IMG/VR virus record: IMGVR_UViG_3300023257_000007
Location: 1 to 64,000 of that record
Strand: one strand, 5' to 3'
Length of the DNA: 64,000 nt
How positions within the stretch are numbered: the first letter of the stretch is position 1; the number at the start of each line of letters is the position of its first letter. Positions 26,277 through 32,428 of the stretch are shown here, piece by piece. Position numbers and translations under genes: made by a program. The notes under the pieces were generated by a model that did not search any database, was not told the origin of the DNA, and worked only from the letters and a program-made list of their open reading frames with translations.

Positions 26277-26651
26277 TTAATATTCTCAAAGAATTCTTTA
26301 ACAGGTAATAATATATAACGTGTGCGCGCGCATGCGTATATAAAAAAATTTTTCAAAAGATTAAAATTTTTAAAAATTTTATTTCATTAATATTATCTTT
26401 AACGGTAATACTTATTTTCCTAAGAATAAAGAATTTTCAACTTATTGAATTTTTTAGTATAATTAGTATAATCTTTTAATTTTAGAAAAAAGTGACTTTT
26501 TAAGTCAAATATATAATTTTCACACTTTTATAAATTTTTAAAATTTTTAAACTTTTTAAAATTTTGAAAGTACAAGAAAATAGATTACGAAAAAATAATA
26601 TTTTTTTAAAGATTTTTCGAAATCAAAACGTTCTTTAAAATATTGTAAAAT

Positions 26652-27895
26652 ATAGTCTGTGCTTGGGCAGACGTTCATCTTCGGATGGAGCAGATAAAAC
26701 ATCGTAAGGTGTCGAAAGAGAGGAAGGTCACTTATTCTCGCCAATAGTCTTCGGATTATGGTCAATCTAAGCAAGTCTCATTTTTGTCTTGACCAACAAG
26801 ACAGCCTCAATAGAAAGGGGATAAGATGAAACAACGTGAGTAACGATCTTTGGTAAGAATAAGATGGCTCAATTGCCCGCAAGGGGAACAAAAGTTATCA
26901 AATATAGAATGGGGACATTCCAATATCGTTTAATCCACTCATTAAGTGTTCGTTGATAGATAAGAGATAGAATAGTAGTTCGAATGTGGAAAGTTAGAGC
27001 ATTATTCAGTTTCAAAGGTGTTGAAAGATGTCTTAACAAACGGCACAGTAAGTCCTCCGGGCTGAAACGCATACGAAGGGTCGTATTTTGTAAGGTGAAA
27101 CTTATGAATCGGTGGACAGGCACTTTGTGGTGATATCATTTTTTATTAGCTCACAATGGTAGAGCAGTAGTATTCTAACTAAAGGTAGATGGTTCAATTC
27201 CATCATAAAAAAAGCAAAGTCCCTGTCCGTCTGTTAAGTAAAGGTGCTTAAAACTTTACACTTCGGTGAATAAAGTGGATTCAAAGCTCGCAAGGTAGAG
27301 AATCTTTGATACAGTAGCCTCAACTTTTAACCCTAGCAGGTTATTAACGCCACGATAGTGGTGAGTGTACGCAAAATATCGAGTAACTTAATAGTACTAG
27401 TGATGTAACCACATAAAAAGTTACAGTACAGCTGGTGTACATAGTTGCCTTTCGAGGGATTATGTGGACAATTCAGGAACGAAGAATAGCAACTCTTTGA
27501 TAATCTGAAGAAAGCAAAACATATAATAAACTGTGTGTTTTACCAGTATGACAGTTTTTAGTCTCAAAATTGTTTCTCTATCAAGATAAAAACCTTGACG
27601 TGGTGATAGAGCTTTAAACTAATATTTATCAAATGTGAAAAAAGTAGTAGAAATTAAAAGACGCAACACGCAGCCCGTTCTCTGCGCTACTTCACAAAAA
27701 TGTGAACGATAAAAATCTTCACATTTAAATACACCAAGAATAACACCATCACTGTAGCCCTAAAGGAGTGATGTTGTCGCATAAAAACGATTAGTGTTAG
27801 TGTGTGTTTGAGAAGACGACGGGGGATTTCACAAAAGTAACATGAATCAAGTAGTGTGAAATAAGAAATTCCTCCAAGTTTTCTCGGAAAATTTT
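26652..27895 (+). ncRNA. Giant structured non-coding RNA (GOLLD/ROOL-like), ~1.25 kb; boundaries approximate
   Basis: No plus-strand ORF, GC clearly above flanks. UUCG hairpins at 26674, 26744, 27259, 27448; GNRA hairpins at 26699, 26876; embedded tRNA-like domain; abuts a tRNA array. Confidence 0.75.
27140..27212 (+). tRNA. tRNA-like domain embedded in the giant RNA (degenerate anticodon arm)
   Basis: TTTTTAT/ATAAAAA acceptor, GCTC/GAGC D-stem, GATGG-TTCAATT-CCATC T-arm, 6-nt anticodon loop. Confidence 0.65.
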
Positions 27896-27975
27896 TTTAT
27901 GCAAGAAATAATTTGTATATTGTCAAAAATAGAGAATAAATATTTAATATATAAAAAATAGTAAAAACAGAAACA

Positions 27976-28062
27976 ATGAATAATACTTTTAAACATAATA
28001 GTTCATCTTTTCATAAGTGGTTTAGCCGCTTCGGATCGGGAATGTTATGCCTTAAAAGTTAA
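27976..28062 (+). CDS. Leader peptide 1 (28 aa, Phe/His/Trp-rich)
   Basis: MNNTFKHNSSSFHKWFSRFGSGMLCLKS*, downstream of TAATATATA at 27945 and upstream of a terminator. Confidence 0.7.
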   Translation: MNNTFKHNSSSFHKWFSRFGSGMLCLKS

Positions 28063-28091
28063 GATTAAAAAATATTAATCAACAAAGGGAC

Positions 28092-28129
28092 AAACTCGAT
28101 TCTAACAAGATTCGGGTTTTTTGTTTTTT
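28092..28129 (+). terminator. Attenuator terminator upstream of tRNA-His/Trp/Phe
   Basis: AAACTCGATTCT / AGATTCGGGTTT stem plus U-tract. Confidence 0.78.
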
Positions 28130-28151
28130 ATAAACGTTCTTAAAAATATAT

Positions 28152-28227
28152 GGTGGTTATAGTGTTAGTGGTAGCACGGCAGGTTGTGGTTCTGTTAGGA
28201 TGGATTCAAATTCCATTAATCACCCCA
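28152..28227 (+). tRNA. tRNA-His(GUG)
   Basis: Cloverleaf; GCAGG-TTGTGGT-TCTGT; C73. Confidence 0.88.
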
Positions 28228-28237
28228 AATTTAACAC

Positions 28238-28308
28238 AGGTCTATAGTGTAACGGTAGCATAAGTGATTCCAAACCACTTGGTCCGGGTTCAAATCCTGG
28301 TAGGCCTG
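28238..28308 (+). tRNA. tRNA-Trp(CCA)
   Basis: Cloverleaf; loop TTCCAAA; T-loop TTCAAAT. Confidence 0.9.
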
Positions 28309-28377
28309 CGAGAAGTTTAAATATGGTTAAATGAAGGATGGTTAAAAGGTAGAAAAATGAAATATTAATACAAATTT

Positions 28378-28450
28378 GGAACCGTGGTGTAGGTGGTCTG
28401 CACGATACTCTGAAGAAGTATAGGTACCCGTTCAACTCGGGTCGGTTCCA
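28378..28450 (+). tRNA. tRNA-Phe(GAA)
   Basis: GGAACCG/CGGTTCC acceptor; ATACT-CTGAAGA-AGTAT. Confidence 0.88.
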
Positions 28451-28527
28451 CTTTAAACTTTTAAATTTTAATATATATTAATGTGAAGAAAGAACCAGTT
28501 TTAATGAAAAATAATAAAAATTAACAA

Positions 28528-29274
28528 ATGAAAAAATATACACAATTTAGTAAATCTTTAGAAAAAATCAATCAAAATATGGAATTATTTGAAAAAGCTA
28601 TCGATCAAAATCAAAAAGAAAAAATAGATAGATATATTAATGCAAACAATTACAAAAAAGTTCTATCAGAACTAAAACAAATTATTTTTAATTTAAAAAA
28701 AGAAATTAAAAATTCCAATTTTGATGATTTCATTTATAAACAGAACAATAAAGATATAGAAATAATATATAATCCGACTATTCGTGGTATTTTAACCTAT
28801 TTAGATGGTAAAAGAGTAGAATTTGAATATGGAAAAGAAGAGAATCAACAAAAAATCTTAAACACTATCTATATTGATGGTGAAAGAGACCCATTTTTAG
28901 ATATAACTATTCAACCACCATTTAATCAGATACATATTAATAATGGTTTGCCAGTTTTTATGAAAGGTCTAGGATTAGGTAAAAAAGTTTACAAAAAACT
29001 AATTAAAGATTTTGGTTATCTTTCTTCTTTTAAAGGAATAAAACCTTCTATTGAAAGTGATTTGGTTTGGGATACTTTAGCTGATGATAGAGAATTGTTC
29101 ACTTTTGTGAATGATAACAATATCATTTGTTTTTGGAATGAAGTAGATTATGATATTATAATTATTAAATTGAAAGAATTTTACAAAATAAAAGGACAAA
29201 AAATCTTTGATAACGATTTTAAAAAGTTATATAACTTAACTGATGAAAAAATAGAACAAATAATTAATATATAA
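28528..29274 (+). CDS. Hypothetical protein, possible GNAT-like fold, CTS-like N-terminus
   Basis: MKKYTQF start; KGLGLGKKVY resembles the acetyl-CoA loop. Confidence 0.45.
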   Translation: MKKYTQFSKSLEKINQNMELFEKAIDQNQKEKIDRYINANNYKKVLSELKQIIFNLKKEIKNSNFDDFIYKQNNKDIEIIYNPTIRGILTYLDGKRVEFEYGKEENQQKILNTIYIDGERDPFLDITIQPPFNQIHINNGLPVFMKGLGLGKKVYKKLIKDFGYLSSFKGIKPSIESDLVWDTLADDRELFTFVNDNNIICFWNEVDYDIIIIKLKEFYKIKGQKIFDNDFKKLYNLTDEKIEQIINI

Positions 29275-29292
29275 AGAAAATCAATTTTAAAC

Positions 29293-29541
29293 ATGAAAAT
29301 TAAAAGATATAATGAATCATTAATTGATAATGATAATAACACTAGAGAAGATTTCAATGAAGAAATTGATGATCTAATATCAGAATTAAAGATAAGATAT
29401 AATAATTTTAATAATTTAATTGATTCATACAAAATAATAGAAAAAAGTAAAACAGAAGAATGGGAAAAAGTTAGAAATGAACTAAGAGGCGCATTTGATG
29501 GTTTTAAAAATGAATTAATACAAAAAATTAAAAAATTTTAA
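29293..29541 (+). CDS. Hypothetical protein, CTS-like N-terminus
   Basis: MKIKRYNES. Confidence 0.7.
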   Translation: MKIKRYNESLIDNDNNTREDFNEEIDDLISELKIRYNNFNNLIDSYKIIEKSKTEEWEKVRNELRGAFDGFKNELIQKIKKF

Positions 29542-29544
29542 ATA

Positions 29545-29619
29545 ATGATTATAATTAACATAAATAGTAAATCGAAAAAGAATAGTCGTCTGAAAACGGC
29601 TCGGAATTGTATTACCTAA
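29545..29619 (+). CDS. Leader peptide 2 (24 aa, Ser/Lys control codons)
   Basis: MIIININSKSKKNSRLKTARNCIT*, overlapping alternative hairpins. Confidence 0.68.
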   Translation: MIIININSKSKKNSRLKTARNCIT

Positions 29620-29641
29620 ATTTTTAGGTACAAAGAATTAC

Positions 29642-29671
29642 AAACCGAGTCTGAAAAGATTCGGTTTTTTT
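29642..29671 (+). terminator. Attenuator terminator upstream of tRNA-Lys/Ser array
   Basis: AAACCGAGTC-TGAAAA-GATTCGGTTT plus T-tract, ending 3 nt before tRNA-Lys. Confidence 0.85.
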
Positions 29672-29673
29672 AT

Positions 29674-29751
29674 TGGCCATTAGCTCAGTAGGTTTAGAGC
29701 ATCTGCCTTTTAAGCAGAGAGTCCAGGGTTCGATCCCCTGATGGCCAACCA
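29674..29751 (+). tRNA. tRNA-Lys(UUU), CCA encoded
   Basis: Perfect cloverleaf; TCTGC-CTTTTAA-GCAGA. Confidence 0.95.
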
Positions 29752-29753
29752 AT

Positions 29754-29826
29754 GGATCTGTAGCTCAGTTGGTAGAGCTTCTGCCTTTTAAGCAGAAAGT
29801 CCAGGGTTCGAGTCCGACTAGGTCCA
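29754..29826 (+). tRNA. tRNA-Lys(UUU) second copy with mispaired T-stem (possible pseudogene)
   Basis: Same anticodon arm; T-stem CAGGG vs CCGAC pairs at only 2 of 5 positions. Confidence 0.65.
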
Positions 29827-29830
29827 CTAA

Positions 29831-29945
29831 GGCTTATAACAAATAGGTTGTATTTATAGAGCATTTGTCGGGTTACCGCATGTCACTAAAATGTATATTT
29901 TAAGAGTTACTAGAGATATATGAGGTTCGAATCCTTAATAAGCCA
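29831..29945 (+). pseudogene. Elongated tRNA-like element
   Basis: GGCTTAT/ATAAGCC acceptor and TGAGG-TTCGAAT-CCTTA T-arm around an oversized, non-canonical core. Confidence 0.5.
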
Positions 29946-29949
29946 CTAT

Positions 29950-30033
29950 GGAAAGCGTCCGGTTGGACGAGGGGCTACTCTTGAAAAGTAGTAATGGGTT
30001 ACACCATTAGGGGTTCGAATCCCTTGCTTTCCG
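29950..30033 (+). tRNA. tRNA-Ser(UGA)
   Basis: CTACT-CTTGAAA-AGTAG; long variable arm; G73. Confidence 0.92.
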
Positions 30034-30037
30034 CTAT

Positions 30038-30125
30038 GGAAGAGTACCCAAGTTGGTGAAGGGGCTGGTTTGCTAAACCAGTAGGTCTGAAATACGGCGC
30101 GTGGGTTCGAGCCCCACTTCTTCCG
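30038..30125 (+). tRNA. tRNA-Ser(GCU)
   Basis: CTGGT-TTGCTAA-ACCAG; long variable arm; G73. Confidence 0.92.
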
Positions 30126-30173
30126 CAATTAGGTTTGAAACTCAGTTGGTGACCTACTAAGAAAGATATTTCA

Positions 30174-31613: not shown

Positions 31614-31840
31614 TTAATCTAATCGACTATACGCTGATTTTATAAAAAATTAGAGGAAAGTCGGGACAATTTTGCTTAAGGCAGGAGACTTTGGTCGTTC
31701 GTACTGCCGAGGTTGCAACTCAAACAGATCTAGGAGGTGAGCAATTCTATAATGATCGGGTTAGAGGCACTCTTCGGAGAAGTGTAAACACTTAGATAAA
31801 TGTATAGATAAAACAAAATCCCGCTTATGGACTAGGTTAA
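31614..31840 (+). ncRNA. rnpB: Minimal RNase P RNA (~227 nt)
   Basis: CR-I GAGGAAAGTCGGG at 31653, CR-V ACAAAATCCCGCTTA at 31813; the two form P4; P1 closes 31614-31624 with 31830-31840. Confidence 0.85.
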
Positions 31841-31865
31841 TTTTAACTTTTAAATTATTTAAATT

Positions 31866-32150
31866 ATGCAAGATAAATGTAAAATATGTGGTCGTAATGA
31901 AACAACATCATTTCATCATTTAATACCAGTAACATTACATACTAAAAAGTGGTTCAAAAAAAATTACGAAAAAGACTATATGAAATCACACGGTATAGAC
32001 TTATGCAAACAATGTCATAAGGCTATACATAAATTTTGGGATGAAAAAACTTTGGGCAAAAAATTTAATACATTAAAAAGTTTATTAGAAAATCAAAAAA
32101 TTAAAAAACACATTGAATGGGTTATAAAACTAAAACATAATAAAAAATGA
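31866..32150 (+). CDS. Small HNH-family protein
   Basis: CKIC...FHHLIP...LCKQCHKAIH. Confidence 0.75.
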   Translation: MQDKCKICGRNETTSFHHLIPVTLHTKKWFKKNYEKDYMKSHGIDLCKQCHKAIHKFWDEKTLGKKFNTLKSLLENQKIKKHIEWVIKLKHNKK

Positions 32151-32428
32151 CAAAAGACAAAACTAAAGACGAATCTAAAAACGAATCTAAAGAAAAAGAA
32201 GAAAATTTATACTCAATTATTGTATATAATGACGAAGTTAATACATTTGAACATGTTATTGGTTGTCTTATTAAATACTGTAAACATGAATTAACACAAG
32301 CAGAACAATGTACCATGATTATACACAATAATGGTAAATGTGATGTTAAAAAAGGCACATTTAAAGAATTAGAAACTCCTTATTATGCTTTACTTGATTC
32401 TGGGTTATCTGCTGAAATTGAAAATTAA
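32147..32428 (+). CDS. clpS: ClpS N-degron adaptor
   Basis: IIVYNDEVNTFEHVI...IHNNGKC...GLSAEI. Confidence 0.92.
   Translation: MTKDKTKDESKNESKEKEENLYSIIVYNDEVNTFEHVIGCLIKYCKHELTQAEQCTMIIHNNGKCDVKKGTFKELETPYYALLDSGLSAEIEN

What the first reader, a model, noticed from the sequence alone, without database searches (positions are those of the whole stretch)
26652..27895. ~1.25 kb ornate non-coding RNA next to the tRNA arrays
Seen: the only long gene-free stretch in the window, GC-enriched, with repeated UUCG- and GNRA-capped hairpins on the plus strand and further stems (e.g. 27821-27876). No interrupted host gene flanks it. Known: GOLLD and ROOL RNAs are giant phage/prophage ncRNAs, often near tRNAs, recently shown to form RNA-only cages; typical lengths are roughly 0.6-0.8 kb. 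Inference: an extra-long GOLLD-like member or a new class. I cannot assign the family by eye.
Basis: partly seen in the sequence, partly recalled or inferred. Interest (0 to 1): 0.72.

Follow-up and report, generated by a model that had tools for sequence, protein, structure and literature searches.

The report
Divergent GOLLD RNA with embedded tRNA
A huge salt-lake phage carries a divergent copy of the known giant GOLLD RNA, with a tRNA-like piece built into its middle and an unexplained 350-base extension; it is a real, slightly unusual member of a known class, not a new class.

Summary
Window 26652-27895 is gene-free, richer in G+C than its flanks, and full of UUCG/GNRA-capped hairpins on the + strand.

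Positions 27073-27541 match Rfam GOLLD end to end. The E-value is 9e-25 and the score 93.9 bits, below the curated 150. By my count 80 of 98 model base pairs are kept.

A tRNA-like element (27139-27213, nominal anticodon CUA, defective anticodon stem) sits in the GOLLD linker. Phage phiCbK has tRNA-Gly at the same offset, and two uncultivated phage GOLLDs have tRNA-Lys and tRNA-Asn there.

Those two RNAs share the window's 5' domain (26652-27138). A three-sequence alignment gives clear compensatory support: 54 pairs change on both sides, against 11-14 in slid controls.

So GOLLD proper is about 890 nt, a normal size. The "extra length" is a 354-nt 3' tail (27542-27895) with no match to any family, tRNA, ORF or relative. 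Its role is open.

The closest phage by primase lacks the whole 1.24-kb block at the syntenic site. No transcript evidence could be obtained.

Verdict: a divergent new member of the known GOLLD class, in a phage of at least 345 kb, next to tRNA arrays. Interest is moderate.

The parts
26630..26651 (+). Conserved upstream motif; a candidate promoter element for the RNA (inference).
   Evidence: GTTCTTTAAAATATTGTAAAATAT in the window matches GTTCTTTGAAATTTTGTAAAAATAT just upstream of the L225 GOLLD, although the flanks are otherwise unalignable. The sigma-70 scan gives nothing better than chance here.
26652..27072 (+). GOLLD 5' domain of a sub-family type.
   Evidence: It aligns with the 5' domains of L225 and L233 (A5). 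RNAalifold predicts 112 pairs. 89.8% of cells are paired, against 39-46% in slid controls, and 54 pairs change on both sides, against 11-14. On a structure predicted from the two relatives alone, the window keeps 60 of 81 pairs, against 38-46% when slid. There is no sequence similarity to the canonical 5' domains sampled.
27073..27138 (+). Long hairpin that opens the Rfam GOLLD model (positions 1-62), plus the start of the linker.
   Evidence: In the alignment, 18 of 23 pairs are standard. The blocks ATTTTGTA / TATGAA / GGCAC / GGTGA are conserved in L225 and L233.
27139..27213 (+). tRNA-like module in the GOLLD linker, with nominal anticodon CUA.
   Evidence: ARAGORN calls it, and Rfam tRNA scores it 45.4 bits. 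It starts at +66 from the GOLLD hit start. tRNA-Lys in L225, tRNA-Asn in L228/L233 and tRNA-Gly in phiCbK start at the same place. The acceptor stem is all A-U. The anticodon stem has 2 mismatches of 5; in Infernal's register it is a 4-bp stem with a 6-nt loop. The D- and T-arms are intact and 79% identical to L225's tRNA-Lys.
27214..27541 (+). GOLLD conserved 3' domain.
   Evidence: Rfam RF02032, model to position 416, 93.9 bits, E 9.1e-25; 3.9e-26 in the whole record. 12 of 13 model helices are kept. One 4-bp GCAA-capped hairpin is lost (my count).
27542..27876 (+). 3' tail: a run of hairpins with no assigned family.
   Evidence: MFE -80.5 kcal/mol, z -2.66 on +, against z -1.72 on -. No Rfam hit at E of 10 or less. 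No tRNA, even allowing introns. No credible ORF. No similarity to what follows the GOLLD in L225 or L233. Six TGTGAA/TTCACA copies lie in 27631-27862. Strand and membership are uncertain.
27877..27897 (+). Weak terminator-like hairpin (UUUUC-UCG-GAAAA) followed by U7.
   Evidence: Read from the sequence. This end region aligns with the terminator-like end of the much shorter intergenic region in L129. It is not called on the + strand by the consensus scan.

Best explanation
Window 26652-27541 is a phage gene for a divergent GOLLD-class RNA. It has a roughly 420-nt 5' domain, a long hairpin, a linker that carries a tRNA-like module, and the conserved roughly 330-nt 3' domain.

By homology with the solved GOLLD (a 14-mer RNA-only cage with the linker inside), it most likely folds into the same two-domain unit. 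It would then self-assemble into a multimeric shell with the tRNA-like module in the lumen, and it would be made during infection alongside the phage's tRNA arrays.

The tRNA-like piece descends from an ordinary linker tRNA (nearest: tRNA-Lys). It keeps the acceptor, D- and T-arms but has a damaged anticodon arm. It therefore more likely serves as a structural or processing handle (RNase P / RNase Z) or a decoy than as a working amber suppressor.

The 354-nt tail (27542-27895) is most likely a co-transcribed 3' extension that ends at the terminator-like hairpin at 27877-27897. It is not part of the conserved GOLLD fold.

Shown: homology of the 3' domain, a conserved and covarying 5' domain, the tRNA position, and the indel. 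Inferred: transcription, ends, cage formation, the role of the tRNA-like piece, and co-transcription of the tail (about 0.45).
For: - Full-length GOLLD match at E 9e-25, and 3.9e-26 in the whole record.
- 80 of 98 model pairs are standard and 12 of 13 helices kept, many by compensatory change (my count).
- The 5' domain is shared with two GOLLDs that pass Rfam's cut-off: L225 at 155.2 bits and L232/L233 at 162.5 bits. Covariation is well above slid controls.
- The tRNA sits at +66 in all three, and in phiCbK. The literature states that tRNAs sometimes lie in the GOLLD linker and that the linker faces the cage interior (PMC12286853). A pseudo-tRNA inside a mycobacterial GOLLD is reported in PMC6582537.
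- Context: a phage record of 344,634 bp with 35 tRNAs, with tRNA arrays starting 258 nt downstream.
- The whole 1.24-kb block is missing at the syntenic site of the closest phage: 1761 nt against 524 nt between shared anchors.
- There is no internal hairpin-plus-U-run between 27541 and 27877 (reading).
Against: - The score is below Rfam's gathering cut-off (93.9 against 150), and one small helix is lost.
- Only three distinct sequences support the 5' structure, so covariation counts are not independent events.
- The loops that make the quaternary contacts in the cryo-EM structure were not mapped, so cage formation is untested.
- There is no transcript evidence. The single read-laying run failed. 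Two metatranscriptome runs hold only 7-11% of the region's 31-mers.
- The tail has no relatives, folds almost as well on the - strand, and carries repeated TGTGAA/TTCACA half-sites that could be DNA-level sites.
Confidence: 0.85

Rival explanations
1. The tail (27542-27895) is not part of the GOLLD transcript. It is an independent element: either a small RNA gene of its own, or a DNA-level cluster of protein-binding sites (operators or iterons) built from TGTGAA/TTCACA half-sites, placed between the GOLLD gene and the next promoter.
For: - Six TGTGAA/TTCACA copies, with exact 9-mers repeated directly and inverted.
- The fold is nearly strand-symmetric: z -2.66 against -1.72.
- Only 1 of the 10 capped hairpins lies in the tail.
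- Relatives end the GOLLD at the model end and follow it at once with tRNAs.
- A TTGATA-19-TATAAT promoter-like pair lies at 27497-27527 (read).
Against: - G+C stays raised through the tail.
- The tail is gained or lost together with the GOLLD relative to L129.
- No terminator separates it from the GOLLD 3' end.
- The 7-mer is not enriched across the window as a whole: 24 found against 19 expected.
- The hairpin motif has no extended relatives elsewhere.
Confidence: 0.35
2. The whole 1.25 kb is one RNA in which the tail is an integral third structured domain. This would be a true extra-long GOLLD variant with an altered assembly.
For: The G+C-rich block is continuous and moves as one indel. 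The tail folds better than shuffles. The only terminator-like site lies at its end.
Against: The tail shows no conservation or covariation. It is absent from the two sub-family relatives and from the canonical GOLLDs sampled, whose G+C-rich block ends at the model end. phiCbK has 820 unannotated nt after its GOLLD, but they include a tRNA-Cys.
Confidence: 0.2
3. It is a self-splicing intron or another mobile ribozyme, not GOLLD.
For: A relative (L225/L227) has a group I intron at 94.5 bits about 165 nt downstream of its GOLLD. Introns therefore do occur in such tRNA/GOLLD islands.
Against: No intron family reaches E of 10 or less anywhere in 26300-28200. No gene or tRNA is interrupted.
Confidence: 0.02
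4. It is a new RNA class unrelated to GOLLD, or a decayed protein gene, and the Rfam match is chance.
For: The score is below the gathering cut-off. The 5' domain cannot be aligned with the canonical 5' domains.
Against: E is 9e-25 over the whole model, with helices kept. The 5' domain is joined to bona fide GOLLD 3' domains in L225 and L233. There are no ORFs. Folding shows strong strand asymmetry.
Confidence: 0.02

Closest known systems
GOLLD RNA (Rfam RF02032; env-38 structure, PDB 9MEE, Kretsch et al. 2025, PMC12286853)
   Same: It has a two-domain layout with a roughly 420-nt 5' domain, a linker and a roughly 410-nt conserved 3' domain. The 3' domain is homologous. It is phage-borne and lies next to tRNA genes.
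   Different: It scores 93.9 bits, while the sampled canonical members score 196-326. One small helix is lost. The 5' domain is not alignable to the canonical ones. It carries a tRNA-like insert, and 354 extra nt follow the 3' end. Cage formation is not tested.
GOLLD of Caulobacter phage phiCbK (JX163858.1:105042-105528, in the alignment of PMC12286853)
   Same: A tRNA is embedded in the linker at the same offset: tRNA-Gly at +65/66 from the 3'-model start. The phage is large, and a long unannotated stretch follows the GOLLD.
   Different: phiCbK's tRNA is an ordinary tRNA-Gly(TCC). There is no sequence similarity in the 5' domain. The genome is 62% G+C.
Uncultivated-phage GOLLDs L225/L227 (IMGVR_UViG_3300010352_001405 and 3300025867_000010) and L228/L231-L233 (3300012147_000045 and 3300012031_000010)
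   Same: They have the same 5'-domain type with compensatory changes, the same opening hairpin, and a tRNA at +66. L225's phage shares a primase at 42% identity.
   Different: They pass Rfam's cut-off at 155 and 162 bits. Their linker tRNAs are well formed (Lys UUU, Asn GUU). They are followed directly by tRNAs, and in L225 by a group I intron, not by the window's tail.
Mycobacterial GOLLD inside tRNA arrays, with an internal pseudo-tRNA (PMC6582537)
   Same: A degenerate tRNA lies inside the GOLLD gene, within a tRNA cluster.
   Different: The setting is a bacterial chromosome or prophage. The sequence was not compared here.
ROOL RNA
   Same: It is a large ornate phage/prophage RNA near tRNAs that forms RNA-only cages.
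   Different: No family other than GOLLD and tRNA reaches E below 1 in 26300-28200. ROOL's two halves are intertwined, whereas here there are two separate domains.

Membership tests
GOLLD (RF02032) | Conserved 3' domain matching the covariance model in sequence and structure. | tested here: met
   Full model 1-416, E 9.1e-25. 80 of 98 pairs are standard and 12 of 13 helices kept (my count).
GOLLD (RF02032) | Score at or above Rfam's curated gathering cut-off (150 bits). | tested here: not met
   93.9 bits. Another huge-phage GOLLD, L139, is also below the cut-off at 140.1 bits. The E-value leaves no doubt about homology.
GOLLD (RF02032) | A large, structured but variable 5' domain of about 400 nt upstream of the linker. 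| tested here: met
   421 nt at 26652-27072. It is shared, with covariation, by two GOLLDs that pass the cut-off. It is not alignable to the canonical 5' types sampled.
GOLLD (RF02032) | A linker between the domains, sometimes holding a tRNA. | tested here: met
   A tRNA-like module at +66, the same place as in L225, L228/L233 and phiCbK.
GOLLD (RF02032) | Phage or prophage location near tRNA genes. | tested here: met
   A virus record of 344,634 bp with 35 tRNAs; an array starts at 28153.
GOLLD (RF02032) | Homo-oligomeric (14-mer) cage, and conservation of the loops that make the inter-chain bridges. | not tested
   The bridge residues of PDB 9MEE were not mapped onto the window. Assembly needs an experiment.
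GOLLD (RF02032) | Expressed as RNA, rising in lytic growth. | tested here: inconclusive
   Read laying failed. Two metatranscriptome runs hold 7-11% of the region's 31-mers.
Functional amber-suppressor tRNA | A cloverleaf with an intact anticodon stem, a 7-nt loop and anticodon CUA. | tested here: inconclusive
   ARAGORN calls CUA, but with 2 mismatches of 5 in the anticodon stem. Infernal's register gives a 4-bp stem and a 6-nt loop. The acceptor, D- and T-arms are intact.
Group I / group II introns | A catalytic core matching the Rfam models, interrupting a gene. | tested here: not met
   No hit at E of 10 or less. Nothing is interrupted.
ROOL / OLE | A match to the family covariance model. 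| tested here: not met
   Only GOLLD and tRNA reach E below 1 in 26300-28200.

The most novel reading that the evidence does not exclude
In this sub-family the linker tRNA is a swappable cargo of the GOLLD shell: Gly, Lys, Asn, and here a CUA-anticodon derivative, all at one fixed position. The window's version would deliver or time the release of a stop-codon-reading (or decoy) tRNA. The 354-nt tail would be a lineage-specific third domain that changes how the shell opens or is processed.
Probability: 0.12. Interest if true: 0.8.

Novelty: new member of a known kind. Interest (0 to 1): 0.42.

Why it matters
GOLLD is one of very few natural RNAs known to build a closed shell by itself, and its function is unknown.

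This locus adds a strongly diverged member from a phage of at least 345 kb. That is useful for seeing which parts of the fold are indispensable.

Together with phiCbK and two uncultivated phages, it shows that one fixed point of the linker takes tRNAs of different identity. One of these has lost a proper anticodon arm while keeping its acceptor, D- and T-arms.

That pattern makes the "shell holds a tRNA" idea directly testable: processing by RNase P/Z, charging, and shell assembly with and without the insert.

The tail is a small open problem, not a discovery.

Tried and rejected
- BLAST of the block against 50,697 phage records found no match.
- Pattern scans of IMG/VR and JGI metagenomes with the window's own GOLLD-core signature found only 100%-identical copies plus unrelated GOLLDs.
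- I followed synteny through the neighbouring primase: 842 homologues, four relatives fetched. They have tRNA arrays but no GOLLD at the site.
- I searched 80 related IMG/VR records with RF02032. One hit resulted.
- The genome-contig scan gave only chance matches.
- Sequence profiles of canonical 5' domains do not find the window's 5' domain.
- A MAFFT-based alignment of diverse 3' domains was too poor for pair counting. I relied on Infernal's alignment instead.
- The tail gave nothing in any search: Rfam twice, ARAGORN with introns and lowered thresholds, ORF listing, comparison with relatives' downstream DNA, and a hairpin-motif scan of IMG/VR.
- TAG recoding is not seen in the 344-kb record. 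19 of 244 long ORFs end in TAG, and there is one read-through merge.
No read-level evidence was obtained.
- The bridge residues of the cryo-EM structure were not mapped, because that would have required typing a long sequence.

Full report
**Where it lies.** The window is bases 85476-149475 of a 344,634-bp IMG/VR virus record. The record is 25% G+C and CheckV rates it 48% complete. It carries 35 tRNA genes. Sequencing runs that hold the region are salt-lake metagenomes. A second assembly of 348 kb holds the region at 100% identity.

**The observation.**
- There is no ORF of 100 aa or more between 26060 and 28528, and no credible small ORF inside 26652-27895.
- G+C is 33-39% across the block, against 17-24% beside it.
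- Ten UUCG/GNRA-capped hairpins lie on the + strand, against two on the - strand. Equal-sized pieces of the window average 2.2, and 0 of 500 shuffles reach ten.
- The 5' 421 nt fold much better on + (z -2.46) than on - (z +0.45).

**What it is.**
- At Rfam's gathering thresholds only tRNAs are found. With E-value reporting, GOLLD (RF02032) matches 27073-27541 on the + strand over model positions 1-416. The score is 93.9 bits and E is 9.1e-25; in the whole record E is 3.9e-26.
- From the printed alignment I count 98 model base pairs in 13 helices. 80 are standard pairs in the window and 12 helices survive. One 4-bp GCAA-capped hairpin is gone.
- Canonical GOLLDs fetched for comparison score 196-326 bits. 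The window's copy is therefore unusually diverged but clearly homologous.
- No intron, ROOL or OLE model comes near.

**The embedded tRNA.**
- ARAGORN places a tRNA at 27139-27213 with anticodon CUA, and Rfam tRNA gives 45.4 bits. It starts 66 nt after the start of the GOLLD match, inside the model's single-stranded linker.
- Other GOLLDs hold a tRNA at the same offset. A GOLLD in a related huge phage holds tRNA-Lys(UUU) (L225, 155.2 bits; the phage's primase is 42% identical). Another phage GOLLD holds tRNA-Asn(GUU) (L228 = L231-L233, 162.5 bits). Caulobacter phage phiCbK holds the annotated tRNA-Gly(TCC).
[quoted passage not shown] It also reports that a mycobacterial GOLLD contains a pseudo-tRNA (PMC6582537).
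- The window's copy is nearest to L225's tRNA-Lys, at 79% identity over the D- to T-arm. Its acceptor stem is all A-U. Its anticodon stem has two mismatches of five in ARAGORN's register; in Infernal's register it is a 4-bp stem with a 6-nt loop.
- I therefore treat "amber suppressor" as a nominal call only.
- In the 344-kb record TAG behaves as a normal stop: 19 of 244 long ORFs end in it, and there is one read-through merge.

**The 5' domain.**
- 26652-27072 has no sequence similarity to the 5' domains of the canonical GOLLDs sampled.
- It aligns block by block with the 5' domains of L225 and L233.
- RNAalifold on the three gives 112 pairs. 89.8% of cells are paired, against 39-46% when partners are slid by 1-3 columns. 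54 pairs show changes on both sides, against 11-14 in the slid controls.
- A structure predicted from the two relatives alone is kept by the window at 60 of 81 pairs (74%, against 38-46% slid). 30 of those differ on both sides from a relative.
- Three sequences are few, but the signal is consistent. Further scans found no more members.

**Size and ends.**
- GOLLD proper is 26652-27541: 890 nt, or 815 without the insert. That is ordinary for a class whose members often exceed 800 nt.
- A motif just upstream (26630-26651) is nearly identical in L225 and may be a promoter element. This is inference.
- In the canonical GOLLDs the G+C-rich block ends at the model end, and several are followed within 10-15 nt by a tRNA. 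In L225 a tRNA follows the model end at once, and in L233 what looks by eye like an interrupted tRNA does so.

**The tail.**
- 27542-27895 is a run of hairpins (z -2.66 on +, -1.72 on -).
- It ends in a weak hairpin plus U7 at 27877-27897.
- It has no Rfam match, no tRNA even allowing introns, and no ORF.
- It has no similarity to the relatives' downstream DNA, and no relatives turned up in a motif scan.
- It holds six TGTGAA/TTCACA copies.
- Its nature is open. It could be a co-transcribed extension (my preference, about 0.45), a separate element, or a third domain.

**Gain or loss as a unit.** The closest phage by primase (L129, 73% amino-acid identity) keeps the flanking small ORFs, the downstream 28-aa ORF with its terminator, and the tRNA array. 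It has 524 nt where the window has 1761 nt. The difference equals the G+C-rich block. GOLLD is sporadic in this phage group: 1 of 80 related records has one, though most are fragments.

**Mechanism and limits.** By homology the RNA should fold and assemble like GOLLD, with the tRNA-like module inside. Nothing here tests assembly or expression. The one read-laying run failed, and two metatranscriptome runs hold only 7-11% of the region's words.

**Verdict.** This is a real, divergent member of the known GOLLD class, with a known kind of linker insert in a decayed form and an unexplained 3' tail.

Noticed in passing
window 55154-55226 (+): A second, well-formed tRNA with anticodon CUA (60.9 bits, G+C-rich stems). 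Yet TAG ends 19 of 244 long ORFs in the 344-kb record, and recoding is not evident.
   Followed up: partly
window 27976-28062 (+) and about 28083-28127: A 28-aa ORF conserved in L129 with synonymous changes, preceded by a repeated A/T-rich promoter-like motif (27925-27975, with similar copies elsewhere in the genome). It is followed by a hairpin plus U-run terminator with a compensatory change.
   Followed up: partly
window 31620-31850 (+): A G+C-rich gene-free stretch upstream of a 94-aa ORF that looks HNH-like by eye (31866-32150) and a 93-aa ORF that looks ClpS-like by eye (32147-32428). Neither ORF was scanned against a family library. The stretch contains GAGGAAAGTCGGGAC. There is no Rfam hit and z is only -1.27. 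However, 31702-31767 is 85% identical to L228:10864-10799, the contig that carries the tRNA-Asn GOLLD.
   Followed up: partly
window 27631-27862: A cluster of six TGTGAA/TTCACA elements. AAATGTGAA occurs twice direct and once inverted, TTCACAAAA twice, and TGTGAAA[A/T]AAG twice.
   Followed up: partly
own genome G000:C1:34617-34940 (-), outside the window; L132:2024-2572: An RF-1-domain ORF with a 177-aa open frame in the phage record. A relative encodes a 182-aa PCRF+RF-1 protein. This is of interest beside phage suppressor-type tRNAs.
   Followed up: no
L225:2123-2368 (= L227:9718-9963): A group I intron (94.5 bits) about 165 nt downstream of the related GOLLD, beside a weak tRNA hit. It is probably an intron-bearing tRNA. 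L233:2005-2150 also looks like an interrupted tRNA.
   Followed up: no
L139:6350-6405: The linker of another huge-phage GOLLD (140.1 bits, on a 348,740-bp contig) holds a tRNA-like relic with a GGTTCGAATCC T-arm. ARAGORN does not call it.
   Followed up: partly
L125:489-838; L268:125-564: ARAGORN calls tmRNA-like genes just upstream of a canonical GOLLD and of phiCbK's GOLLD. These were not checked.
   Followed up: no
window 28153-30126: Two tRNA clusters (His, Trp, Phe, then Lys, Lys, Ser, Ser) separated by a 248-aa ORF with no PHROG match.
   Followed up: no
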